The notes below the pieces were generated by a model, which saw only the letters and a list, made by a program, of their open reading frames with translations, did not search any database and had not been told where the DNA came from. A DNA stretch of 64,000 nt from Oopsacas minuta (taxonomy: Eukaryota > Animalia > Porifera): the NCBI GenBank assembly GCA_024704765.1, contig JAKMXF010000133.1, positions 62,001-126,000 on the forward strand. The letters run 5' to 3'. This document shows, piece by piece, positions 15,213-59,482 of this stretch. Positions within the stretch are counted from its first letter, which is position 1, and every line of letters starts with the position of its first letter. A program made the position numbers and the translations under genes.

Positions 15213-15851
15213 TTATTTACAGAAACAAGTTCCAGTTCCATATTGTGTTTGGTGTTTATGAAGTATATCATCATAATGTTCATCACAAGAAACTGAAAAA
15301 TTCTTTTCAATAATATTCTCACACATAGTTTGGAATGCTTTATCGATTCCTTTTCCATCTTTGGCGCTTGTTTCAAATTTCAGTTTGTACCCCTTGTAAT
15401 AATTGTCCAACTCTGAAAGGGGTTTAGTATATTGGACACCGGATAGGTCACATTTATTCGCTAAAATTATGCAAGTTTTGGGGTCGAATTGTCCATTTTC
15501 TGTCAGTTCCTTTGTCCAATATTCCAGACCGTTAAATGACTCTTCGGAACTGACATCATAGACTAGGAATATTCCCTTGGCGTCATGGTAATGTGTTCTT
15601 GTTACAGACCGATATAATTCCTGTCCCGCTGTGTCCCATATTACAAACAAATAATTCTTCCCTTGAATATTCAGGAGCTTTTGTACAACGTCTTGATCAA
15701 GAGTTTTGTGACCCTGTTGGTCTATAAAGATCCCCTTCGTGTACCTATCAATTATACTTGTCTTACCAACACCTGCGTTGCCAATAAGAATTATTTTGTT
15801 CTCCACCATACTCCTGTGATGGGAGGCTTTTGTCACCTTCAAGAAAGACAT
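15213..15851 (-). CDS. Intronless Rab-like GTPase (tandem copy B)
   Basis: GNAGVGKT, WDTAGQE, NKCD, ETSAK and a C-terminal CFCK. Switch I is atypical (KTLDQDV). Confidence 0.9.
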   Translation of the reverse strand: MSFLKVTKASHHRSMVENKIILIGNAGVGKTSIIDRYTKGIFIDQQGHKTLDQDVVQKLLNIQGKNYLFVIWDTAGQELYRSVTRTHYHDAKGIFLVYDVSSEESFNGLEYWTKELTENGQFDPKTCIILANKCDLSGVQYTKPLSELDNYYKGYKLKFETSAKDGKGIDKAFQTMCENIIEKNFSVSCDEHYDDILHKHQTQYGTGTCFCK

Positions 15852-16454
15852 TCTAATTATAGATTACATGTATAAATTCTGAGATCCTGTGGACCCCCTG
15901 CTGTCATCAGTGGACCAATGTGGACCATTTACCCCTGGGTTTGGAACCGCCGATATAGAGGTTAGCACAATTTGGGCGCTTTCCCGCCAAATGTGGCAAT
16001 AATCGGGTTATTATGACATTTCCCGCTTAAATAATATTCCATTTCTATCATAGTTACTTGAGAGCTCAATTGGAATTCTATATTATAACTAGTACTTAAT
16101 AGCGACACATGGATACACAGGCGCACACCGTCAATTTATTAGGGACACATTTTAACAGTCCGTTAGCCTGGGCGCCAAAAGATCTATAGTTCACATTCCA
16201 ATAGAATGAATAATTAATAGAATTAACCAATAATCAAATTATGAGATAAACTCGCGGGTGATTGGTTGATTATAAAAGGAGTAAAATGTCTAGACACATA
16301 TTTGGCGCCTAAACCATCAAATAATATGGAATTACAATAGCCAATCAGATTAGAGGGTTAGTTTAATATGAACATATTATTAATAACAAACAAACAAACA
16401 AACAAACAAGTAAACAAGCAAATTATTAAAGTAGTAAACAAGCTGGTAAACAAT

Positions 16455-37207: not shown

Positions 37208-40200
37208 TTAGTTAGGAGGTCTGACAGGAGTGTCCCTGGGGTCTCTCGCTCTCCTCATCAAAATGTTCCTCATCGTCTTCATAGCTAGCTTTGGCTCCCT
37301 CCAGTTCCATCATGTTTACGCACTCAGAGTGATCTGGGGCCTTCATTGGGTAAGTAGATCTTCTAAAAAATAGATTTACATATGACACAAGGTGTGAAAA
37401 TTAATCATAAACAAATACACTACATTGTCAAAAGAAGAACAGAACACTACAATTTGTGACACAAAGGGCGAGGTGTTGAAACAATAACTTGTTACTTGTT
37501 TATGACATATAAATGTTCAAACTTTGTTCGAAATAATCTTTGTTTATGTAACTAAAGTGGCATGCATGTTGGTGCCACGTGTCAATTGTGGCAGGGTGTA
37601 TCAACAGCAGTGGCGGTCTCATGGTGTCGCATAGCAGACGGTACAATTACCACATAAATACACCAAAATATGATTAATCTAACACCTACCGTTTGGGCAG
37701 AAACAATTCTATTGATTTTAAATTTTCATTACTAGCGAAGTTATCTTCAGGAAATTCTATACAGAACTTAAAGTATAGATTCCCACGGCCTGTCTGGGAA
37801 CTCTTCGGCATTCCCTCTCCAAATAGCCCCTTCACACATTCGTGTGCCAACACGCGCCCCTGAGGACTCCTGATTATCAGTTTACGACCATCTAAATGTG
37901 TGAACATGAAACTACATCCGGTTAGAGCCTCCGTAAGTGTCACTTTTTGTTCCACAAATAAGTCATCTTTCTGTCGCTGGATTGTGTCGTGTGGTTTTTG
38001 TTGAAGAACAACCACAACATCCCCTGAGTCCATGTCAGGGTGTTGGTCCGCTTCTCCAGCGAATGGGATCTTCTGTCCATGTCGCATTCCTGGCTCTACA
38101 TCGATCTAATAATAGAACACTATAAATTCCTGAGATACAAACAACTCACCATAGAAACATTGTATAAACTAATTTAATTATGACCATATTATGGGTGGAT
38201 AGGACACATTTTTGGGCCCTTATTTTTTACAAATGACCACTGGCGGAGGTGTAAAAATATGATTAATCAATCAAAAGTATGTTTAATTGGGATATATTCA
38301 ATACAAATACATTAGCGAATATGAACCAATAGAATACGAGTATTCATAATACGATAGCCAGCAATCTTATTGGTCAAAATTATAATACCAAATAAGGTGT
38401 TAAAATGATTACTTCACAAATCCTGACCCTAGGTACACTTCTACACCCCTAATTGTACCCATGTAACTATTTATATATCAAATTTCCCGCCACAAAGGTG
38501 ACAAAATAAACAACTCATGATTTCTTAACAGGCAATCCTGACCAATCAATTTTGGGGTATATCAATTATGATATTCCATAGCAACCATTATCATTTAAGG
38601 AATGCTATTAATTTAAGGAATGTGAATTGAAAGCATATTTCTGATAAGATATTATCATATCATAAAGTGGCTCCATCAGAAGATTATATAACCAATAACA
38701 TTAATGTGTAAGATATAAATATGGAAAAATATGAATAATATGCATCTAAAGATGGCATGCAATTCAATAGACACAGAAATAAACGTGACACCATTTGAAA
38801 AATTGGAACAGCTCATCTATGTCACTTATAAGAAGATAGTGGAGGTGGCGGTGGCGAGACGGGACCACCTTTTGGAACAATTGGGTGAGCTTAAAATAGT
38901 ATATATAACAAAAGAGGAGACAAGATTGCGAGAAATCAGAGATCTAGAGAAGATGATTGGCCAATTGAGTGACATGAGTGTCCAACAGAACAAAATTGCA
39001 AAAATGCATGAAGAACACCTTTTAAAAATGAAACAAGAAAAGGAACAGTCACTAACACCAACACCTATGCCTATAATTAGTTTCAGTTCCAGTGGGCTGG
39101 TTTCTATCCTCAAAAACTTAGAAAAACTTGGCGCACTAGAGGACACTAAAAATCTATACAAAGACAAGATTCAACCAGTCAAAAGCTTTGGTAAGGAAGG
39201 TGCCAAGAGGGGGGAACTGAATCTGTCTCTTGATATTTCAATCGATGAAAATATGAGAATTTATATAGCGGATCATTGGAACAAGAGGGTACAGGTTTTC
39301 ACACTTGAGGGCAAATTTATCGCTGAAATAGGTAAGGGCCACTTAGCGTGCCCGTATTCTGTGGAGTGTTTTGAAGGACACATTTTTGTGAGTGATTGGA
39401 ATTTGAATACAGTTTTTAAGTTTGATTTGACACATTACAAACTGGTTTGCAAAAGTGACAAAGCTGAATTCTGTCTGCCATTTGGACTGACAGTCGACAC
39501 AAATGGAGAAGTGTTAGTGGCGGATATGAAGAACAATCGCGTGGCAGTGTGCACAACAAACTTAAAAGTAATCGGAGAAATTGGGAAGGACAGATTAAAG
39601 TTTCCAAGAGCAGTCCTTGCCCAATTGTACCAATTAATAATAGCGGACAACAACGAGACACATAACATCCACATATTCTCTAAAAGTGGTGAATTCCTCA
39701 AAAGTGTCATTAAGCTGGAAAATGGCACAGACCACATTTTTATGTGTCTCGATAAGTTCAGTAATTTATTGGTGAGTGATGATAAAGGACAATCAGTACA
39801 AATATACAATAATGAAGGGGAACTGATACACAGGATAGGGTCCAAAGGTTACCCCAGGGGTGTATTGGTGTGTAATGAAGTTATCATATGTTCACGATTT
39901 GAGAATGTTATTGATTTCTATTAGTTTGTTTGTATTTGTGTTTGTTTAATTGTTATTAAGAATAAAAATGATAATATATACAAATCAGGGCGACTGATGG
40001 AACCTTAAGGACTGTTTCTCGTGTCCAATGGGGGCGTGAACCAATCCATAAGTGTTTGTACGTCCAGAATTGATTGAAGAAAATAGAAGACCCCACTTTA
40101 AAGGTAGTTCGAAAAACCACCTTTAAAGTGGCATGCGGGGATGGCTCACTAATCTAACGTGGCATATATACAAAGAACAGTTTTCACACCTATTTGTGCC

Positions 40201-40991
40201 ACTTACCATCAGTTCACAATCCTTTTTAACAACTTTAGATCCATTACAAACTTTACATTTGTCTTTCTCATTTATTTGTTCTCCTTGTCCGTGACAGGTG
40301 GAGCAAGCACTCTGTGTTTGCATAATCATTCCTGTAAACAAATTTGTTTACTTATCTGATATTACTCAGTTTGTTTGTTTGTTTGTTTATCTGTCTGTCA
40401 GTCTGTCAGTCTGTCGGTACGTCCGTGACCGTTAGTTTGTCTGTTTAGTCATTTGTTTATCTGTTCGTGTGTCTGTTTGTGTGTGTATTTACATATTCGT
40501 ATCATATATTTGTCAGTCTGTTTGTTTGTTTGTTTGTTGCTATTATAATCAAACCTGGTCCCGATTGTACAACTTTCATAACCATTCCTTGTCCGCGACA
40601 CTCTCGACACGTCTGTACAGCGCCAGGTTTGCCACCCGCACCTCTACACTTGTGACATATTACATCTTTATCGTAATTAACCTTACCCATAGAACCTGTG
40701 TATAGCTCTGCTAAAGTTACCTAAAATAGAAAAGTCTATAAATAGAATTATTATTCTGGGCGCGAGAAAGCGGGAAATATTCATTCTGGGCGGGCTTTGC
40801 ATAATGTTAAATTTTAAGGCGGGATTTGTTAAAATAAGATAACTTACTTCATGAGGTACCATAAAAGTTTTCCCCTTTCTCCTCCTGGATCTGCCACCCA
40901 TCATTTGCCCGCCAAATAGTGACTCGAAGGGGTGACCACCTCCTCCACCTCCTCCAAACATAGAAAATATGTCATCATTCCCTCCAAACAT
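37208..40991 (-). CDS. DNAJA-type Hsp40 lacking a J-domain (exons 40991-40848, 40720-40555, 40331-40207, 38105-37690, ~37362-37208)
   Basis: A G/F-rich start, VTLAELYTG, four CxxCxGx(G) motifs (CHKCRGAG, CRECRGQG, CSTCHGQG, CKVCNGSK), IDVEPGMRHGQKIPF.GEADQ, TLTEALTG and EGMP...GNLYFKF. No HPD motif was found. Confidence 0.85.
38731..39924 (+). CDS. Intronless coiled-coil plus NHL-repeat protein (TRIM-NHL-like, no RING/B-box), nested in DNAJA intron 3
   Basis: FGKEGAKRGELN...ISID...IYIADHWNKRVQVF, PFGLTVDTNGEVLVADMKNNRV and LKFPRAV. Confidence 0.88.
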   Translation: MNNMHLKMACNSIDTEINVTPFEKLEQLIYVTYKKIVEVAVARRDHLLEQLGELKIVYITKEETRLREIRDLEKMIGQLSDMSVQQNKIAKMHEEHLLKMKQEKEQSLTPTPMPIISFSSSGLVSILKNLEKLGALEDTKNLYKDKIQPVKSFGKEGAKRGELNLSLDISIDENMRIYIADHWNKRVQVFTLEGKFIAEIGKGHLACPYSVECFEGHIFVSDWNLNTVFKFDLTHYKLVCKSDKAEFCLPFGLTVDTNGEVLVADMKNNRVAVCTTNLKVIGEIGKDRLKFPRAVLAQLYQLIIADNNETHNIHIFSKSGEFLKSVIKLENGTDHIFMCLDKFSNLLVSDDKGQSVQIYNNEGELIHRIGSKGYPRGVLVCNEVIICSRFENVIDFY

Positions 40992-41400
40992 GTTACTAAT
41001 TATAGGCTAAATTGAGAGATCAAATGAATGATAGATGGTAAATAAAGTGGCACAACTGATTCTGCCGCTAGGACACAATTTCAATAACCTTGGAGAATAA
41101 AGTATTATATAAGAATTAGTGCGGGAAGACTAGAATCTGCTGGAATATTCTAGAATATATTACAGGCTAAAATTAGAAGAAATTGTTCTATTAATAAACT
41201 CTAATCTGATTGGGCAATTAGAACACTGACTGCTTGCAAATACTTGAGTAGTAATAGTGACACAATTTGGTGGCTTCGTACACATTTTTGTCAACAATAT
41301 AAATAAACACATTTTGAATATTATTATCATTTCCATAATTAATGATTCACACCTAATTTGTCAATAACAACAATTAATTACTAGTTTATAAACAAACAAA

Positions 41401-42537
41401 TTAAATGTCAACAAACTCAAAATAACTTAACACAAACAAAGTGGCACTCAATGCCACTCCAATCGCTACTATAGTTACAGAAAGTGTCACAGGAATGTAT
41501 AAATTGTGTCCGATCTTAGATTTTAGGAATTTCCTAATCCGCTTTGAATTGAATCTCCGTGGCATAAATATTTGGGTATATCTTCGGTTGCTAAGGAGAG
41601 GTGTCAATGGAATGTGATTAATTCGTGACAACCGAAATGGCGGGTAAGTTTGAAATAATATCAAAGAATTTCGAATTATTTCTTCAAAATTTAGATCTCT
41701 GGGGAGGTGTGATAAGAATTGGTGTACTTGAGCCATCTCACATTCCACAGTCAATAACTCTTTTCTACGTTGTAACACAATGGCAGCTGTCACATAAAGT
41801 GGCATGAAAGGGTGACAAACTAGGAAAAGATCAAAGAAACGAAGCAACAAACCAAGTTCTGATAAAGAGTGGCTGAACCAAGTTATGAGCCAAGAAAGAC
41901 AAAATATTTCACCAACGCCACTTCGTGCCATAAAACCACCTAAAACAGGATCAGACTGTGCCACAATGCCGTTTAGGAATTTCAATATGGTACTTGTACG
42001 CGACATATCGCGATACATGAAATCTATTAATATATTTTGTGACACAAACCATAAAAAAGTTGTCGCGAATGGACAATAACCGACACAAAGCAAGATGGTT
42101 AATGCTATATCATGGTAACCTTGATAGTAGTGTAAATGTGTCCCCTGGTGGAGCACATTCATTATAAGCTGTATGGTGTGTCCCTGCCACTTTAAAGTGT
42201 CGTGTTCCGACATCTTTTTTGGCATTCTTGAGCCACTTCTTCTTACATCCATTTTCACTATTTTAAAGTCTTTGTGTTCAGAATAATCTTTGAAAACTCG
42301 ATCGAAATCTGATTGGCCAATATTTCCTAATTCGTAGCTGGTCTCAAAAGGTGGCGCGTGAAAATTAATTGTGTCCGAATGTGGATTTATTATTTTTGGC
42401 CATACCAATGATCTAGTTTGGTTGTCAAGCAAACCACCTTGAGAACGACAACAATCGTGAAGCTGTGATTGGTCATATGCAGAGTTTTGTAAGGCTAATT
42501 TTATTTGTTTGTGTTTTTCATTTCTCCAATAATTCAT
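41401..42537 (-). CDS. TBC1D20: TBC-domain Rab GAP, intronless
   Basis: GGLLDNQTRSLVWPKI, IVKMDVRRS (Arg finger), LHYYQGYHDI, FCLSWLITWFSH, RFFDLFLVCHPFMPLYVTAAIVL and a C-terminal TM helix. Confidence 0.9.
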   Translation of the reverse strand: MNYWRNEKHKQIKLALQNSAYDQSQLHDCCRSQGGLLDNQTRSLVWPKIINPHSDTINFHAPPFETSYELGNIGQSDFDRVFKDYSEHKDFKIVKMDVRRSGSRMPKKMSEHDTLKWQGHTIQLIMNVLHQGTHLHYYQGYHDIALTILLCVGYCPFATTFLWFVSQNILIDFMYRDMSRTSTILKFLNGIVAQSDPVLGGFMARSGVGEIFCLSWLITWFSHSLSELGLLLRFFDLFLVCHPFMPLYVTAAIVLQRRKELLTVECEMAQVHQFLSHLPRDLNFEEIIRNSLILFQTYPPFRLSRINHIPLTPLLSNRRYTQIFMPRRFNSKRIRKFLKSKIGHNLYIPVTLSVTIVAIGVALSATLFVLSYFEFVDI

Positions 42538-43282
42538 TGCTAAAGTAAACAATAATAACAACAAACAACAAACATTTGGGAGTAAACAAATATCTTATAC
42601 ATAAAATATATATCTTGTAAACCCTTGGAGCTGACAGGCCGACACATTTATCACTTTCTCGCAGAGATATGTTGAAACTAGAACAATGTATTCATATGTC
42701 ATACAGAAGCCAATTTTCAAGTGCCTAACACCTACAAGTTCTCCCAAACAACAACAACAGGCTCCACTTAATAGGGTTACATTGGTACCAGCGACCAATT
42801 TGACCCGATTAACCTGTGGCTCTTTCCTTTAGTTCCATATTTGACACGATTTTTCCCAAATAACATTGTGTAATATAATTAATAGTTAGAGGAAAACTTA
42901 GCTAGAATACATTACGATATATCATGTAATGAATATGATTATTTGGGAAATGAACCTTGAGAGATATTACAAATAAACAAAACTGGAACTAATTAATTCT
43001 GATAAGTAAACAAATCATTTATGAAAGCACAAAATATTTGTCCAAAAAAACAAGAAACGAGAATTAATTCCTGAGTAATATCCCCGCTTGTAATTATTCA
43101 TCTAAGAAATAAACTCTTGCATAATATGGAACTGAAACTAAAGCTTACATCAACAACTTAACCACTTTTGTATAACACAATTTTGGTAATTTATCCTATA
43201 TATATATGTATAACGTGTATATAGTTTTAGAGACATATAAATACAAATAACGCCAAACAAATCAACAAACAAATCAACAAAA

Positions 43283-44464
43283 ATGAACGCAACAATAATC
43301 GATGAAAGTTTCATGAACGGGTTTAACATCCTTAACTATGTTCTAGTAGGAACAACAACAACAATAATAATAATATGCGCATTTTGGATCTGGTACTATA
43401 TCTCAAGTGTTCACCTGGGCAAACGCAAGGTGGCAAACGCAAACAAACGAGAATTGTTAACACCAATAAGCCATGACCTACATTACCTCAAATCTCAGAG
43501 GATCAGGCATTATCTTTTCATCTCAATATTGGCCTTCGAAATGATTCGCAAAATTCTGGCATTAGTCGAATACTTCTACGTTGCTAACCTAGACTCAAAA
43601 TACTATTACATTGAGTTACCTAGCAACCAAGCTGCAGAGAAGGTATGTCCCAAAGATTTACACGACATGGTCATGAAGCGTCCAATACTGATCCTCATCC
43701 ATTCGCTAAATTTCACCGCCACCCTCTGTCTGGTGTCCCTCGTGGGTATCACTATGCTGTTCCTATCAAAAATGTACGGAGGTGACAAGAAGTTCACAAG
43801 TGTGAAAGCGTTGGTGGTTATTCTGGCTATAAAAGCTGTGTTGGTGCTAATCCTGTCCAGCACGGTCTTCTTACACGTCGCGGGTTACTTCGTGTGGCTA
43901 TTCTGTCTGATTTTTGATTGGGTATTAATCGTCATATTCGCGTGTAAACTCAACAAAAGAATCTCCACTACGACAACTAATCGCGATGTGCCAGCAGAAT
44001 TGAAACCGGCACGGCGCCATACACGTGACCACCGTATCATATCTTGCATATCCACATTCCTAACTGGATTCGTGTTGCTATACATAATGTCACAGATAGT
44101 TGGTGTGTCAATTGACATCGCAGATTTGGTAATAATCCGTCCGTGTTTGTTTCGTTACTTTGGAATTTGGATCAATTCTTCGACCACGCAAGAAATACTG
44201 GAATTTATTCAGATAAGAGATGGACTGATTGCAATGGTTTACTCGATTTGTTTCATTTTCGATTTTAGCATCATTGTCACGCATTTTTTCTTGTTGCTAA
44301 GGAACTACAGAAAGGTATGGGAAAAGTTGTTGTGTAAACAAACACATGGTTACGTAAATGTGAAAAAGGTGGAGCTACAAGAGCCACTTTTGAGTGGCGA
44401 CAATAATATTTGGACTGATGAGACATATGTCAAGAAGCTTCAAGGTTCATCTGTTATGATGTGA
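43283..44464 (+). CDS. Orphan multi-pass membrane protein with about 7 TM helices, intronless
   Basis: Seven hydrophobic stretches, an N-terminal NAT sequon and a polar C-tail. No GPCR family motif recognised. Confidence 0.7.
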   Translation: MNATIIDESFMNGFNILNYVLVGTTTTIIIICAFWIWYYISSVHLGKRKVANANKRELLTPISHDLHYLKSQRIRHYLFISILAFEMIRKILALVEYFYVANLDSKYYYIELPSNQAAEKVCPKDLHDMVMKRPILILIHSLNFTATLCLVSLVGITMLFLSKMYGGDKKFTSVKALVVILAIKAVLVLILSSTVFLHVAGYFVWLFCLIFDWVLIVIFACKLNKRISTTTTNRDVPAELKPARRHTRDHRIISCISTFLTGFVLLYIMSQIVGVSIDIADLVIIRPCLFRYFGIWINSSTTQEILEFIQIRDGLIAMVYSICFIFDFSIIVTHFFLLLRNYRKVWEKLLCKQTHGYVNVKKVELQEPLLSGDNNIWTDETYVKKLQGSSVMM

Positions 44465-56282: not shown

Positions 56283-59221
56283 TTTGTTGTTTTGTTTTTT
56301 CGAACTTATTGAGGAACTGGTAAGAGCTACAAACTTGAAATTTGGTACGTGTGTGGAATGTGATTAATCAAGGAACCACTTCATATATCTAAGCGATATC
56401 TCTCAAACTCTCTGAGAAAAGGTGACAAATGTGTCCACCTATCAGATTTTAGTGTTTACTTGAAATAATAGCAACAAACAAACTTACTGAAAGACAGCTG
56501 ATCCATAGGATTTGAAACTGGTGGACCCTCTGGATAAGGTGTCAATAAATATTCACATTGAGTGAATCTATCAAAAGTGGCATCAACGACAACAGTAGCA
56601 GCTGATTCCGACACAATTACAGAATTAACCAATTCATTTGTGGCTGATAAAGTACAAGTCACTATTAATTCAAACTGTGTCGGGTTAGAATTGTCTGTCG
56701 GTGGTAACCATGTAAAGGCAAAGGAATGTGAGTCAATGGTTGCACAAGTATGTGTGTAAACAACATTCCTTGTTGGTAGAGACTTCTCTAAAATAAACAA
56801 ATAAACAATAACTGAAAGAGAAGAAGGAATTTTATTGGGGTACTCACCAGGTGGCATGCTGGCAGGTGTTACTAATATATTAATAGTACCAGTAGTTGTT
56901 TGTGTGACATCTAAAAGTGGTTTATCTGCCACTTCATAAGTGAGAGAATACTCAGAAATTGTGGTGTTAAGAGTTGTGTTGAGGTAAATAAATCCAGCTG
57001 TGTCTATGCTTAAAAATAAATAAAAATTTCAAATTTTATGTAAATAATCGTGTTAGAGGTTTGAAAGTGTCAGAATAGAATTCTACGTCACTGTTTACCC
57101 CTAATTAGCAGGTGGAAGCTAGTCTCTGGGACAATTTTGAAATAATCGCCAAAAGGTGTGAACATATGATTAATCATATGATAAATAGGTGTGTTTACAC
57201 TTAATAGAGTGTATTGACCAATAAAATTACAGTTTACAATCAATACAAATACATTACAGTACTCCACCAGACAAATTGTATTAATGGACCATGGATAATG
57301 AGTTTCAAAATTATACAATAGATTGAGGTGTTTGAGTCATTAAATGTGTCGAGTAAACCACATCAACTCATGTGTCAGCCATCTACAATGAGGTCTGGAT
57401 GTGTCCGCGACACATTATCCATGGTTCAAAAGCAATTAATCAGTAATTCAGGATTTTAAGCACACATACCTGAATGGAGAAGCTGTAACTATGGAATAAG
57501 TGAAGTCATCTTGTCCATCTAAATCAGTAACAGAGGGTAGCCGTCCAACAGCTGATCCAACAGGCACGTCAGCTGACACTGTTATAGAAAATGGATCTAT
57601 AGCAATGACTGGGGAATGTTCATTCACATTCCTGAGATAGACAGTTGCTGAGGACTCGTCCTTGCTCTGTACTTCAATACTTCCATTTATTGAGAGTTTT
57701 ACGGTAACAGAAAATGAGTAATTTGTGGTACCTTTGGATAGAATATATTAACACCTGTGAATGTGTCGCTTGTCATAATTTTAATCCATTAAGGTTCCAA
57801 TATGAAAGTGTCAAAATGTGTCCTTGTACCATAATTTAAATATCATTAAATGGTAAGTTGAGTCCAGATTGAAACAAAATGTGTCTTACTGCCACAATCT
57901 AACACCTAACTCACCAGAATCAAAGTCAAATGGGCTTGCCTGGTTACTAACTTCTCCAGTGGAAGCGTCAATCTGAAAAACCATTTCAGGTTGTGGCACG
58001 GAGTACAGAAATGAACTTGTAGCCACAATTGAAGTGTTTCTATTAGCTGCCACAAATCCAATTTCAGTGTGAAGTGCCACGTCCTCTCTGAGGAGGAAGT
58101 GGTACTCTGTTTGTTGGAATATTGGATCCTCTGGTTCTAGAATAGGACAATGGGTCAGTTAGCTGTCTCTCCAAAGGTGTGAATATCCCTAACCACAGAT
58201 AGCACCCAATGTGACACTTTTATATGGCACATATATTAGCCAAATTATAAACTAACCATCTGGAGTGCGGGCAGCTATGACAGTAATTTCTATAGTGGCA
58301 TTTGCTGATTGAGGTGGCACACCAGAATCTGTAGCCACTACTTCATACATAGTTACACCAGGTGTGAAAGTGGTTGAAGTAGTTATGCCACCTTCCTCTG
58401 TCACTGAAATAGGGCTAGTTCCATTTCCAGGTGGTGTTATTGAATAACCTAATCAAATACGAGGGTTACTAACCAAAAAAGGCGCCAAAATATATATTGA
58501 AAAGGCGGGTATTATGAGCGGGGAAAGTAAAATGGGCAAAATAGTGAACTTCATAGAAACATAATAAAGCAGTTGGAATGCTGTGTTATATGTAATACAA
58601 CTTACTAATGCAATTATAAGGATTCCCATCAATATCTACAGCTGATACAAATCCAATTAGTGAATCAGCTGTTTGATCTTCTGTGAAAGTGAATGAGTAA
58701 CTACTAGATGATAGCATAGGAATGTTGTCATTAATGTCTGTAATAAATATTGTTATGTTTGTTGTGGCAACGTAGTCGTGGGTTTGGAATGTGTAAGTAG
58801 TACTTATCTGGAAGTGAATTGGAACTAAAATATTATTCATAAAACAACAATAAATAAACAACAATTTTTTGATTGGTTACCTGAAGTAAGTGTCTCGTAA
58901 TCTGGCGCGTCAATTGCGGTTACAACATTATAATTAGTGTCAATACTAAACATGTTAGTTCCAATTACAGAAGGTGTTAAAATGATACCAACCTCATTTG
59001 TAATAGGATTCAAATTACCAATTATCTCTCCAACTGAAGTGTGTTCTGGAACTAAGAATGTATAATCAGCTGGGGAGAATACTATTGGTGGAATAGGTGT
59101 AAAAACTGTCAATACTTCACAGGTAAACACAATTATGATCTAAAATCATAAATATAAACAAAGGTGTGAAAATATGAATATAAATACTTACAAGGAAAAT
59201 ACTGTATGAAGTGTGTATCAT
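44797..59221 (-). CDS. Large multi-exon surface receptor: signal peptide - cadherin repeats - FN3-like - NIDO - AMOP - VWD - EGF/cbEGF - TM (single-gene model inferred)
   Basis: Signal peptide MIHTSYSIFLIIIVFTC. Cadherin motifs ITDINDNIP, VVATDSGVPP and LRNVNEHSP. FN3-like FTWLPP. NIDO motifs VSNKGTISF, IAPFWANID, ATW and FQAVVLSDG. Cys-rich AMOP-like CCYS. VWD start GFGDPHFITFDG. EGF motifs DVDECQ and DMNECT. TM followed by tail RSWRRRGRREESTESEIESGTNFKIFKNH*. Junctions between ~53.2 and 56.2 kb were not fully resolved. Confidence 0.65.
49873..51054 (+). CDS. SEC14-like lipid-binding protein (CRAL-TRIO plus GOLD), intronless, nested antisense in the receptor gene
   Basis: LIKWLRARKLN, GEDREGRPV, VDLEGLGLHH, EDNYPETMARILV, LPQCYGG and GOLD motifs WIFKTNNYDINF and GIYILYFDNTYSWFHNKEV. 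It resembles the SEC14L2 group. Confidence 0.92.
   Translation: MATPDPEFDTKEFSEEERMALLELRALILDILPERHNFDNDTILIKWLRARKLNPAKAEKMIRQHFAYLETNCLNYIDKWRPPEVLTKYLPYGSFGEDREGRPVVYFRFGQMDVSGVSRSASKIELLKIMHKNTKLLEDIYITNSAKYGRKIDQLVLVVDLEGLGLHHFYPRGLSYLKALIRGSEDNYPETMARILVITNSPVFHLGWEFAGHFIDEGTKKKIQFIRQSECEEKLTQFITPQELPQCYGGTATFPDTISQGGIVPEKYYLKNILDERQLELSLVPVNARSYVQIHIEVLAPKSILCWIFKTNNYDINFAIYFQPLGDTNTSPITDLKCVCTLQRCDSQVVPCKGDIMCHMAGIYILYFDNTYSWFHNKEVHYMCHIVPPDTYF
51458..52265. mobile_element. 808-bp non-autonomous TIR DNA element (TGT...ACA ends, candidate 4-bp AAAC TSD)
   Basis: The outer 29 bp TGTTTTGACAAAAATGGTCCCCCCTACAA match the right end at 28/29 positions. An inner 24-bp block CCATGGTATTGAATAAAAATGGTC (51519-51542) is exactly inverted at 52209-52232. 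Confidence 0.75.
53417..55478 (+). pseudogene. Helical-module plus NHL-like propeller protein, copy 2, with +1 frameshift near the C-terminus; nested antisense in the receptor gene
   Basis: Near-duplicate of 19892-21757. It reads gacctgtcCtggagaa where copy 1 has gacctgtctggagaa (~55338), shifting GEFIETVCETG...DNCLQML into the frame of ORF 55278-55478. It could be a real truncation or a sequence error. Confidence 0.6.
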
Positions 59222-59482
59222 CTTATTATAGCTAATTATAGAAGTCTATTACAGGAAATTGGAACTTAAAGTATTATACAATATATTCAGGTGTTATAAA
59301 ATGGAACTATTAATTTGGATAGTTCCTATTACAGTAAAAGTGTGAAAATATGAATTTTAAGAAAATCATTAATAAGGAACAACAAAATATTAATAAAGTG
59401 ATAAAAGAGGAAAAATAATAAAGAATAAGTCAAAAGTAAACAAATAACCTAACTAGTAAATAACAACAAAGATAGGTGTGAA

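What the first reader, a model, noticed from the sequence alone, without database searches (positions are those of the whole stretch)
37208..41400. DNAJA-type Hsp40 with no J-domain and no CaaX box
The gene keeps the G/F region, all four zinc-finger motifs and both substrate-binding domains. It starts at MFGGNDDIFSMF, where a J-domain normally ends. The 409 bp up to the TBC1D20 stop and the 42.6-43.3 kb spacer show no HPD-type exon. The ctataattag acceptor 4 nt before the ATG matches those preceding the Rab at 15851 and the receptor at 59221. The C-terminus is TPVRPPN*, lacking the farnesylation CaaX typical of DNAJA1/2. Without HPD it could not stimulate Hsp70 ATPase, so it is a candidate stand-alone holdase or dominant-negative heterodimer partner (inference).
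Basis: partly seen in the sequence, partly recalled or inferred. Interest (0 to 1): 0.7.

Follow-up and report, generated by a model that had tools for sequence, protein, structure and literature searches.

The report
Glass-sponge Hsp40 without its J-domain

Summary
The gene is real: five minus-strand exons (40991-37212) encode 333 aa, identical to NCBI KAI6656723.1, a "hypothetical protein" of the glass sponge Oopsacas minuta.

**J-domain loss: confirmed.**
- No J-domain is detectable in the 64-kb window or in six syntenic loci from other glass sponges.
- Pfam finds only the zinc-finger and C-terminal domains.
- Every ortholog starts at the same ATG, 4-12 nt after a TAG acceptor.
- A Vazella transcript reads through unspliced genomic leader, not a J exon.
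- A heat-shock element plus TATA box lies between the TBC1D20 stop and the ATG. Its 26-nt core is nearly invariant in five lineages.
- One public run behaves as RNA: exon depth is 20,000-90,000 against about 100-400 in introns and upstream, and it confirms two introns.
- dN/dS is 0.07 or less, with synonymous sites saturated.

**"No CaaX": wrong.** TPVRPPN* is the +1 frame. The true C-terminus is GHSCQTS*, the same CaaX box I recall for human DNAJA1, and it is conserved in all orthologs.

**Most likely function (inferred).** A stress-inducible, farnesylated client-binding dimer that cannot itself activate Hsp70.

**Still open.**
- Whether a canonical DNAJA exists elsewhere in the genome.
- The exact 5' end of the mRNA.

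The scan had already noted the spliced-leader acceptors on other DNA of this genome.

The parts
41130..41155 (-). Heat-shock element TTCTAGAATATTCCAGCAGATTCTAG: three perfect alternating nTTCn/nGAAn units plus further spaced units, 164 nt upstream of the ATG.
   Evidence: It is the only TTCNNGAANNTTC match in the 64 kb. The 26-nt block is nearly invariant in five glass-sponge lineages, while the flanks are not conserved.
41105..41111 (-). TATA box (TATATAA), 120 nt upstream of the ATG. The inferred transcription start is about 41080.
   Evidence: A TATA box also lies downstream of the HSE in L001 (-656), L002 (-413), L003/L004 (-100) and L006 (-100). The start site itself is inferred, not observed.
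40996..41080 (-). 5' leader or outron, ending in the acceptor motif CTATAATTAG (41005-40996), 4 nt before the ATG.
   Evidence: RNA-like run X4 has depth 739 at 41007, against about 50,000 at 40908. Acceptors 1-12 nt before the ATG are seen at most gene starts in the window and in all orthologs. Spliced-leader addition at this particular site was not directly seen.
40848..40991 (-). Exon 1: start codon and G/F-rich region (48 codons, MFGGNDDIFSMFGG...KGKTFMVPHE).
   Evidence: The intron 1 joint (40847-40721) is seen in X4 contigs. Orthologs start at the same Met.
40555..40720 (-). Exon 2: start of CTD I and zinc-finger motifs 1 and 2.
   Evidence: Pfam DnaJ_CXXCXGXG. It matches residues 49-103 of P0181.
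40207..40331 (-). Exon 3: zinc-finger motifs 3 and 4.
   Evidence: Pfam DnaJ_CXXCXGXG. It matches residues 105-145 of P0181. Exons 2 and 3 are fused in L001 and L005.
37690..38105 (-). Exon 4: rest of CTD I and CTD II (the client-binding domains).
   Evidence: Pfam DnaJ_C, E = 2.7e-25. Best solved relatives are human DNAJA2 (7zhs) and yeast Ydj1 (1nlt).
37212..37362 (-). Exon 5: dimerisation segment, acidic tail, CaaX box CQTS (codons 37226-37215) and stop TAA (37214-37212).
   Evidence: The intron 4 joint 37362/37690 is seen in 3 contigs of X4. The CaaX cysteine is invariant in a 36-sequence alignment. Orthologs end in CQTS, CQSS or CQPS.

Best explanation
This is a genuine, dedicated gene of the glass sponge Oopsacas minuta (NCBI KAI6656723.1, annotated only as a hypothetical protein). 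It encodes a class-A (DNAJA2-like) Hsp40 that has lost its J-domain and kept all other modules.

**Modules kept**
- a G/F-rich N-terminus
- CTD I with the four-motif zinc-finger insertion
- CTD II
- the dimerisation segment
- a farnesylation CaaX box (CQTS)

**Shown here**
- The exon structure and the domain content.
- No J-domain coding sequence in the window or in the syntenic loci.
- A conserved heat-shock-element plus TATA promoter directly upstream.
- Abundant spliced RNA-like coverage that begins at the ATG-proximal acceptor.
- Orthologs with the same start and end in at least six glass-sponge lineages.
- Strong purifying selection.

**Inferred**
- HSF drives transcription from about 41080.
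- The roughly 85-nt leader is removed by spliced-leader trans-splicing at the TAG ending at 40996.
- Translation starts at AUG 40991.
- The protein dimerises and is farnesylated.
- It binds non-native clients through CTD I and CTD II as a stress-inducible holdase at membranes and in the cytosol.
- Lacking the HPD loop, it cannot itself trigger Hsp70 ATP hydrolysis. Clients would have to be passed on with the help of other J-domain proteins, or be held until stress ends.
For: **Gene model**
- The exon-by-exon translation equals P0181 (KAI6656723.1), 333 aa.
- Pfam finds DnaJ_C (5e-30) and DnaJ_CXXCXGXG (1.4e-14) but no PF00226, even at E <= 1.

**No J-domain**
- An HPD regex, tblastn with four full-length DNAJA proteins, and an HMM built from 40 J-domains found nothing better than E = 2 in the window and in L001-L006.

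**Fold**
- In the AlphaFold2 model the 10-residue blocks covering residues 41-260 average pLDDT 87-97.
- The best matches are DNAJA2 7zhs_A (TM 0.85 by target, 46% identity) and Ydj1 1nlt (TM 0.84).
- All eight zinc-finger cysteines and the CaaX cysteine are invariant.

**Promoter**
- HSE and TATA are conserved in five lineages.

**RNA**
- In run X4 the exon bins reach depth 20,000-92,000. Introns and the upstream intergenic region sit at about 110-400.
- GT..AG joints are seen for introns 1 and 4.
- No joint links exon 1 to anything up to 43100.
- The Vazella pourtalesii Trinity ORF P0172 (357 aa) carries 24 extra N-terminal codons. At least the last ten of them, the part tblastn aligned, are colinear with the genomic leader of L006. 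They are not a J-domain.

**Conservation**
- Amino-acid identity to the orthologs is 69-84%.
- pS is 0.67-0.87 (saturated) and pN is 0.10-0.20.
- dN/dS is 0.02-0.07 where it can be computed.

**Published context**
- A roughly 37-nt trans-spliced leader, many nested genes and microsynteny are reported for glass sponges (PMC10282587).
Against: - The 5' end of the mature mRNA was not seen directly: no loose end at 40996 appeared among the rows shown.
- Run X4 is not on record as RNA. I infer that from the exon/intron depth contrast and the spliced joints.
- A J exon more than 23 kb upstream, or outside the window, cannot be excluded by sequence alone.
- No biochemical property was tested: client binding, dimerisation, farnesylation, heat induction, or lack of Hsp70 stimulation.
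- The L002 HSE has two mismatches.
- Whether the genome also has a canonical J-bearing DNAJA is unknown.
Confidence: 0.8

Rival explanations
1. The same J-less protein acts mainly as a regulator rather than a holdase. It would form heterodimers with a canonical DNAJA through the conserved C-terminal dimerisation segment, or dock J-domains of class-B partners on its CTDs. Either route would tune, attenuate or redirect Hsp70 recruitment.
For: - The dimerisation segment (...VNMMELEG...) and the CTDs are conserved.
- The fold matches DNAJA2 and Ydj1.
- Natural J-less short isoforms of human DNAJB12 and DNAJB14 have effects distinct from, or opposite to, the full-length forms (PMC8792056; PMC10939069).
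Against: - No canonical hexactinellid DNAJA partner was found here. No second Oopsacas or Vazella protein appears among the best 120 hits, though that search cannot exclude one.
- High RNA depth and a heat-shock promoter fit a bulk chaperone at least as well as a stoichiometric regulator.
Confidence: 0.25
2. The J-domain is still part of this gene's product. A distant upstream exon, beyond the neighbouring genes or outside the window, would be cis-spliced to the AG at 40996, and the published 333-aa model would be truncated.
For: - Nested genes and long introns that contain other genes are common in this genome (PMC10282587; notes).
- J-less database entries are often mis-annotations, for example Leishmania J30 (PMC9141911).
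- The acceptor at 40996, and in the reference allele the one at 41007, leaves an open frame into the ATG.
Against: - No J-domain in 23 kb upstream on this strand, nor in six syntenic loci with about 6-10 kb of upstream sequence.
- A conserved HSE/TATA promoter sits immediately upstream.
- In L001 an in-frame TGA lies between the acceptor and the ATG.
- The AG at 41008-41007 is lost by a SNP in three runs.
- The Vazella transcript continues into the genomic leader, not into a J exon.
- No joint from exon 1 to upstream sequence was seen in the RNA-like run.
Confidence: 0.04
3. The locus is a decaying, non-functional remnant of a DNAJA gene, that is, a 5'-truncated pseudogene.
For: Loss of the family-defining domain is what a truncation would produce. 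The hexactinellid clade sits on a long stem branch of 1.26 substitutions per site.
Against: - All five exons are intact, with canonical splice sites.
- dN/dS is 0.07 or less across lineages whose synonymous sites are saturated.
- The start codon, zinc-finger cysteines and CaaX box are conserved.
- There is very high RNA-like coverage with correct splicing.
- The predicted fold is confident.
Confidence: 0.01

Closest known systems
Cytosolic class-A J-domain proteins: human DNAJA2/DNAJA1/DNAJA4 and yeast Ydj1
   Same: - G/F-rich region, four CxxCxGxG zinc-finger motifs inserted in CTD I, CTD II, a C-terminal dimerisation segment and a CaaX box. CQTS is, as I recall, the very box of human DNAJA1.
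- About 46% identity and TM 0.85 to DNAJA2.
- It branches inside the animal DNAJA2-like group.
   Different: - The whole N-terminal J-domain (about 70 residues, with the HPD loop) is absent from the gene, not just from one isoform.
- The clade sits on a long stem branch.
- The N-terminus begins inside the G/F region.
Natural J-less short isoforms of human DNAJB12 and DNAJB14 (PMC8792056; PMC10939069)
   Same: These are naturally produced members of the Hsp40 family that lack the J-domain and do not bind Hsp70. DNAJB12-short nonetheless changes aggregation of a client (polyQ huntingtin).
   Different: - They are alternative isoforms of genes that also make the full-length J-protein.
- They are class-B membrane proteins without a zinc finger or CaaX box.
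- Here the J-less form is the only product the locus can encode, and it has been so since before the sampled glass sponges diverged.
Engineered J-domain deletions of DnaJ/Ydj1 and C-terminal fragments of DNAJB1
   Same: From my own knowledge of the older Ydj1 and DnaJ truncation literature (not re-read here), fragments holding the zinc finger and the CTDs still bind non-native proteins. [quoted passage not shown]
   Different: Those are laboratory constructs. This is a natural gene under purifying selection with its own stress promoter.
J-like proteins (for example Pam16/Tim16) and zinc-finger-only DnaJ-like proteins (for example plant BSD2-type)
   Same: They are relatives of the Hsp40 family that cannot stimulate Hsp70 by themselves (from my own knowledge).
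   Different: J-like proteins keep the J fold and lose the HPD loop, which is the opposite situation. Zinc-finger-only proteins lack the CTDs, the G/F region and the CaaX box that are kept here.

Membership tests
J-domain protein (Hsp40/DnaJ) family in the strict sense | A J-domain (Pfam PF00226) with the HPD loop that stimulates Hsp70 ATPase. | tested here: not met
   - No PF00226 match at E <= 1 in P0181 or in the Vazella ORF P0172.
- No J-like ORF in the window or in L001-L006 by regex, tblastn or HMM.
Class-A (type I) Hsp40 architecture | Gly/Phe-rich region following the J-domain. | tested here: met
   Residues 1-35 are G/F-rich and include a DIF motif (MFGGNDDIFSMFGGGGGGGHPFESLFGG). The region aligns with the G/F region of canonical DNAJA proteins. 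It is predicted to be disordered.
Class-A (type I) Hsp40 architecture | Zinc-finger-like region with four CxxCxGxG-type motifs. | tested here: met
   Pfam PF00684, E = 1.4e-14. The motifs lie at residues 70, 86, 113 and 129. All eight cysteines are invariant in 36 sequences.
Class-A (type I) Hsp40 architecture | Two beta-sandwich C-terminal domains (CTD I and II), with the fold of Ydj1/DNAJA2. | tested here: met
   - Pfam PF01556, E = 5e-30.
- phmmer to DNAJA2 (1e-36) and Ydj1 (3e-29).
- The model matches 7zhs_A and 1nlt_A at TM 0.84-0.85 by target.
Cytosolic DNAJA1/2/4-Ydj1 subgroup | C-terminal CaaX box for farnesylation. | tested here: met
   - The sequence ends CQTS*.
- The cysteine is invariant, and orthologs end in CQTS, CQSS or CQPS.
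- Actual lipidation cannot be tested with these tools.
Cytosolic DNAJA1/2/4-Ydj1 subgroup | Homodimerisation through the C-terminal segment, and client binding by the CTDs. | not testable with these tools
   The segment after CTD II is conserved in sequence but is modelled with low confidence in the monomer.
HSF-regulated heat-shock gene | A promoter-proximal heat-shock element of at least three alternating nGAAn units, and induction by stress. | tested here: inconclusive
   The element is present and conserved in five lineages, with a TATA box downstream. Induction and HSF binding were not tested.
Spliced-leader trans-spliced gene of glass sponges | A leader encoded elsewhere, joined at an acceptor just upstream of the start codon. 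| tested here: inconclusive
   - An acceptor is present 4 nt before the ATG, and RNA-like depth drops about 70-fold across it.
- The pattern is general in the window and is published for Aphrocallistes.
- No leader-bearing read was shown for this site.

The most novel reading that the evidence does not exclude
Glass sponges have no canonical cytosolic DNAJA1/2/4-type protein at all. On this reading, their only class-A Hsp40 scaffold is this J-less, farnesylated, heat-shock-driven protein. The client-binding module of class-A Hsp40s would then work in vivo, over hundreds of millions of years, without direct Hsp70 activation, or with a J-domain supplied in trans by another protein.
Probability: 0.2. 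Interest if true: 0.75.

Novelty: new variant of a known kind. Interest (0 to 1): 0.55.

Why it matters
The J-domain is what defines Hsp40s and is the only known way they switch on Hsp70.

This gene has lost the J-domain yet has kept its G/F region, zinc finger, client-binding domains, dimerisation segment and lipid anchor under strong purifying selection. It also appears to be abundantly expressed from a heat-shock-type promoter.

That makes it a natural experiment on what the rest of a class-A Hsp40 does by itself. It gives chaperone biochemists a ready-made, evolution-tested J-less class-A protein for several questions:
- holdase activity
- mixed-class JDP complexes
- membrane tethering

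It also adds a concrete case to the picture of unusual gene content in glass-sponge genomes.

The gene is already in GenBank as a hypothetical protein. I found no mention of DnaJ or heat-shock proteins in the main text of either glass-sponge genome paper.

Tried and rejected
**1. J exon inside the window.** An HPD regex in six frames, tblastn with four canonical DNAJA proteins at E <= 10 and an HMM of 40 J-domains against all stop-to-stop pieces gave only noise, with best E = 2.1 on the wrong strand.

**2. Bacterial-type promoter and terminator scan.** It is irrelevant for a eukaryote and was ignored.

**3. RNA runs.** None is on record as RNA. I laid all four runs anyway, and X4 behaved as RNA.

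**4. Canonical DNAJA paralogue in Oopsacas or Vazella.**
- None appears among the best 120 hits to the Vazella protein. That list stops at E = 1e-71, so the result is inconclusive.
- I ran no further search on it, because no query would reliably bring such a protein into the top 120.

**5. The Oopsacas genome paper.**
- The main text does not mention DnaJ, HSP, trans-splicing or nested genes.
- The only DnaJ hit in its supplements is a symbiont protein.

**6. This scan's earlier notes.** Searches for DnaJ, HPD and heat-shock element turned up nothing on a canonical DNAJA.

**7. J-less DNAJA-like entries in other databases.**
- They are common in the representative library and the ESM Atlas. 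Examples are 313-aa chordate 'DNAJA4' clusters and a 330-aa beetle protein.
- I could not tell isoforms or truncated models from real genes, so I do not use them as support.

**8. The joined spliced model.**
- Exons were searched by reference.
- Full-length work used the database proteins P0181 and P0172, by id.
Full report
**What is there**

On the minus strand between 40991 and 37212 lie five exons with canonical GT..AG introns:
- E1 40991-40848
- E2 40720-40555
- E3 40331-40207
- E4 38105-37690
- E5 37362-37212

Searched exon by exon by reference, they carry the DnaJ central zinc-finger domain (E2, E3) and the DnaJ C-terminal domain (E4, E = 2.7e-25). The closest solved relatives of E4 are human DNAJA2 (1e-36) and yeast Ydj1 (3e-29).

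A later word search with a glass-sponge transcript protein returned NCBI KAI6656723.1, 'hypothetical protein LOD99_16027 [Oopsacas minuta]', 333 aa (P0181). Every exon translation and both split codons match it exactly. That fixes both the organism and the published gene model. Full-length work used P0181 by id.

**The CaaX box is present**

The intron 4 junction (donor after 37690, acceptor before 37362, split codon CG|A = Arg) gives ...EEHFDEESERPQGHSCQTS*, with stop TAA at 37214-37212. That joint is seen in three contigs of the RNA-like run.

CQTS is a CaaX box, the same four residues as I recall for human DNAJA1. The cysteine is invariant in a 36-sequence alignment of class-A proteins. The orthologs end in CQTS, CQSS or CQPS. 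This half of the finding is therefore wrong.

**The J-domain is absent from the locus**
- Pfam finds no PF00226 in P0181, even at E <= 1.
- The only HPD in a coding context in the 64 kb lies inside CTD I.
- tblastn with four canonical DNAJA proteins (word size 2, E <= 10) aligns only residues from about 100 onward.
- An HMM built from 40 J-domains scores nothing above 6.7 bits in the window or in six syntenic loci.

Upstream on the same strand lie, in order:
- the TBC1D20-like gene (stop at 41401, 409 bp from the ATG)
- an opposite-strand 393-aa ORF
- a large EGF/cadherin-type gene running to about 59.2 kb

**The gene has its own promoter**

The motif TTCTAGAATATTCCAGCAGATTCTAG sits 164 nt upstream of the ATG. 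It has three perfect alternating nTTCn/nGAAn units plus further spaced units, which is a heat-shock element. It is the only TTCNNGAANNTTC in the window.

A TATA box follows at -120. The 26-nt block is nearly invariant in five glass-sponge lineages, while its flanks do not align. A TATA box follows it in each lineage, and a CCAAT motif follows it in some. In L001 and L002, tandem repeats have inflated the distance from TATA to ATG to 656 and 413 nt. This fits a leader that is discarded.

**RNA evidence**

No run is on record as RNA. Run X4, however, has contig depth of 20,000-92,000 in the bins that hold the five exons. Introns, the nested gene and the intergenic DNA upstream sit at about 110-400.
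- X4 shows CT..AC (that is, GT..AG on the minus strand) joints for introns 1 and 4.
- Depth at 41007 is 739, against about 50,000 at 40908. Abundant RNA therefore begins at about the acceptor at 40996.
- No joint links exon 1 to anything up to 43100.
- A low-depth contig runs from inside TBC1D20 to 40992. It may be read-through or precursor RNA.
- A SNP at 41007, seen in three runs, destroys the more distal AG, so that acceptor is dispensable.

The depth figures are per contig and are not a calibrated expression measure.

In Vazella pourtalesii (EukProt transcriptome), the longest isoform ORF (P0172, 357 aa) has 24 extra N-terminal residues. At least the last ten of them, the part tblastn aligned, are colinear with the genomic leader of the near-identical locus L006, including the unspliced ...TTTAG AAAA ATG acceptor. 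They are not a J-domain.

**Trans-splicing context**

Most ORF starts in the window are preceded by a pyrimidine-rich TAG or CAG 1-12 nt before the ATG, and so are all orthologs of this gene. The exact CTATAATTAG is shared by three gene starts.

A roughly 37-nt trans-spliced leader is published for the glass sponge Aphrocallistes (PMC10282587). Earlier notes of this scan report leader-bearing RNA in Oopsacas on other DNA; I did not verify those. I did not see a leader at this particular site.

**Conservation**

Exon 4 finds close relatives only in glass-sponge material. These fall in five 90%-identity clusters, at 69-82% identity to the window's exon 4. The next hits are ordinary DNAJA proteins at 50% or less.

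Six loci were fetched, five full-length (L003 and L004 from one sample) and one truncated contig (L005). The five share the order EGF/VWD gene, opposite-strand roughly 390-aa ORF, TBC1D20, J-less DNAJA. In the five full-length loci, exon 1 starts at an ATG with MFS(G/H)...; all six end with a CaaX box.

Against the window:
- amino-acid identity is 69-84%
- pS is 0.67-0.87 (at or beyond saturation)
- pN is 0.10-0.20
- dN/dS is 0.02-0.07 where it can be computed

The J-less state is therefore old and is maintained by selection.

In a maximum-likelihood tree the clade sits inside the animal DNAJA2-like group, on a long stem of 1.26 substitutions per site. Its grouping with another J-less, long-branched database protein may be an artefact.

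**Structure**

AlphaFold2 with a 36-sequence alignment gives mean pLDDT 80. The 10-residue blocks covering residues 41-260 average 87-97, while the G/F N-terminus and the acidic tail are disordered. Foldseek puts DNAJA2 (7zhs_A, TM 0.85 by target, 46% identity) and Ydj1 (1nlt, 0.84) first.

**How it most likely works**

The steps below are inferred unless a call is cited above.
1. HSF-type activation from the HSE/TATA promoter.
2. Removal of the short leader by spliced-leader addition 4 nt before the AUG.
3. Translation of a protein that dimerises, is farnesylated on Cys330 and binds non-native clients through CTD I and II.

Without a J-domain it cannot trigger Hsp70 ATP hydrolysis. It would therefore act as a holdase, or as a partner or regulator of J-bearing proteins.

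Farnesylation of Ydj1 and DNAJA1 matters for growth at high temperature, ER association and client handling (PMC10939075).

There are precedents for J-less Hsp40 forms with activity of their own:
- the human DNAJB12 and DNAJB14 short isoforms (PMC8792056; PMC10939069)
- the DNAJB1 C-terminal region, sufficient to bind and stabilise MDM2 (PMC8706882)

**Cautions**
- J-less entries in databases are often truncated models, for example Leishmania J30 (PMC9141911). Many J-less DNAJA-like clusters exist in the libraries.
- The case here rests on the promoter, the RNA-like coverage, the independent transcript and the conservation, not on the annotation.
- Still open are whether a canonical DNAJA exists elsewhere in the genome and what the exact 5' end of the mRNA is.

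**Verdict**

This is a real, conserved J-domain-less class-A Hsp40 with an intact CaaX box. It is a new variant of a known kind. It is already deposited as a hypothetical protein but, as far as I could find, has not been described.

Noticed in passing
window 38731-39924 (+): An intronless 397-aa NHL-repeat gene is nested antisense inside intron 3 of the J-less DNAJA gene. The same nested gene sits in the same intron in L002, L003, L004 and L006, but not in L001.
   Followed up: partly
window 42537-42545 (-): At the TAG acceptor 2 nt before the TBC1D20 start codon, one contig of RNA-like run X4 carries foreign 5' letters reading ...AAAAAACTTAC on the mRNA strand. This may be the 3' end of the spliced leader.
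   Followed up: no
window 40992-41765 (-): One low-depth RNA-like contig (depth 404) runs unbroken from inside the TBC1D20 coding region, across the 409-bp spacer, to the DNAJA start codon. It could be read-through, a long 3' UTR or a shared precursor, and this was not resolved.
   Followed up: no
window 15853-15862, 40996-41005 and 59232-59241 (all -): The exact 10-mer CTATAATTAG precedes three unrelated start codons by 1-10 nt. With one mismatch allowed there are 24 matches against 7.75 expected. It may be a preferred acceptor context.
   Followed up: partly
window 21751 (-) and 53423 (+): Two long ORFs (619 and 647 aa), both starting MATNMSQVTPS..., have almost identical 45-nt upstream sequences. 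They look like two copies of a repeated element or a recent duplication.
   Followed up: no
window 43283-44464 (+): A 393-aa hydrophobic ORF has no Pfam match, yet a syntenic opposite-strand ORF of about 389-399 aa is present in all the other glass-sponge loci.
   Followed up: no
window 40817 and 41007: Polymorphisms between the assembly and runs X2-X4: a 20-nt insertion in intron 1, and a SNP that removes the distal AG upstream of the start codon.
   Followed up: partly
L001 10504-10560; L001 6350-6530; L002 5290-5960 and 6260-6440: In L001, the 3' end of exon 4 plus its splice donor is duplicated inside intron 4. Tandem repeats have expanded the leader region between the promoter and the start codon in L001 and L002.
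   Followed up: no
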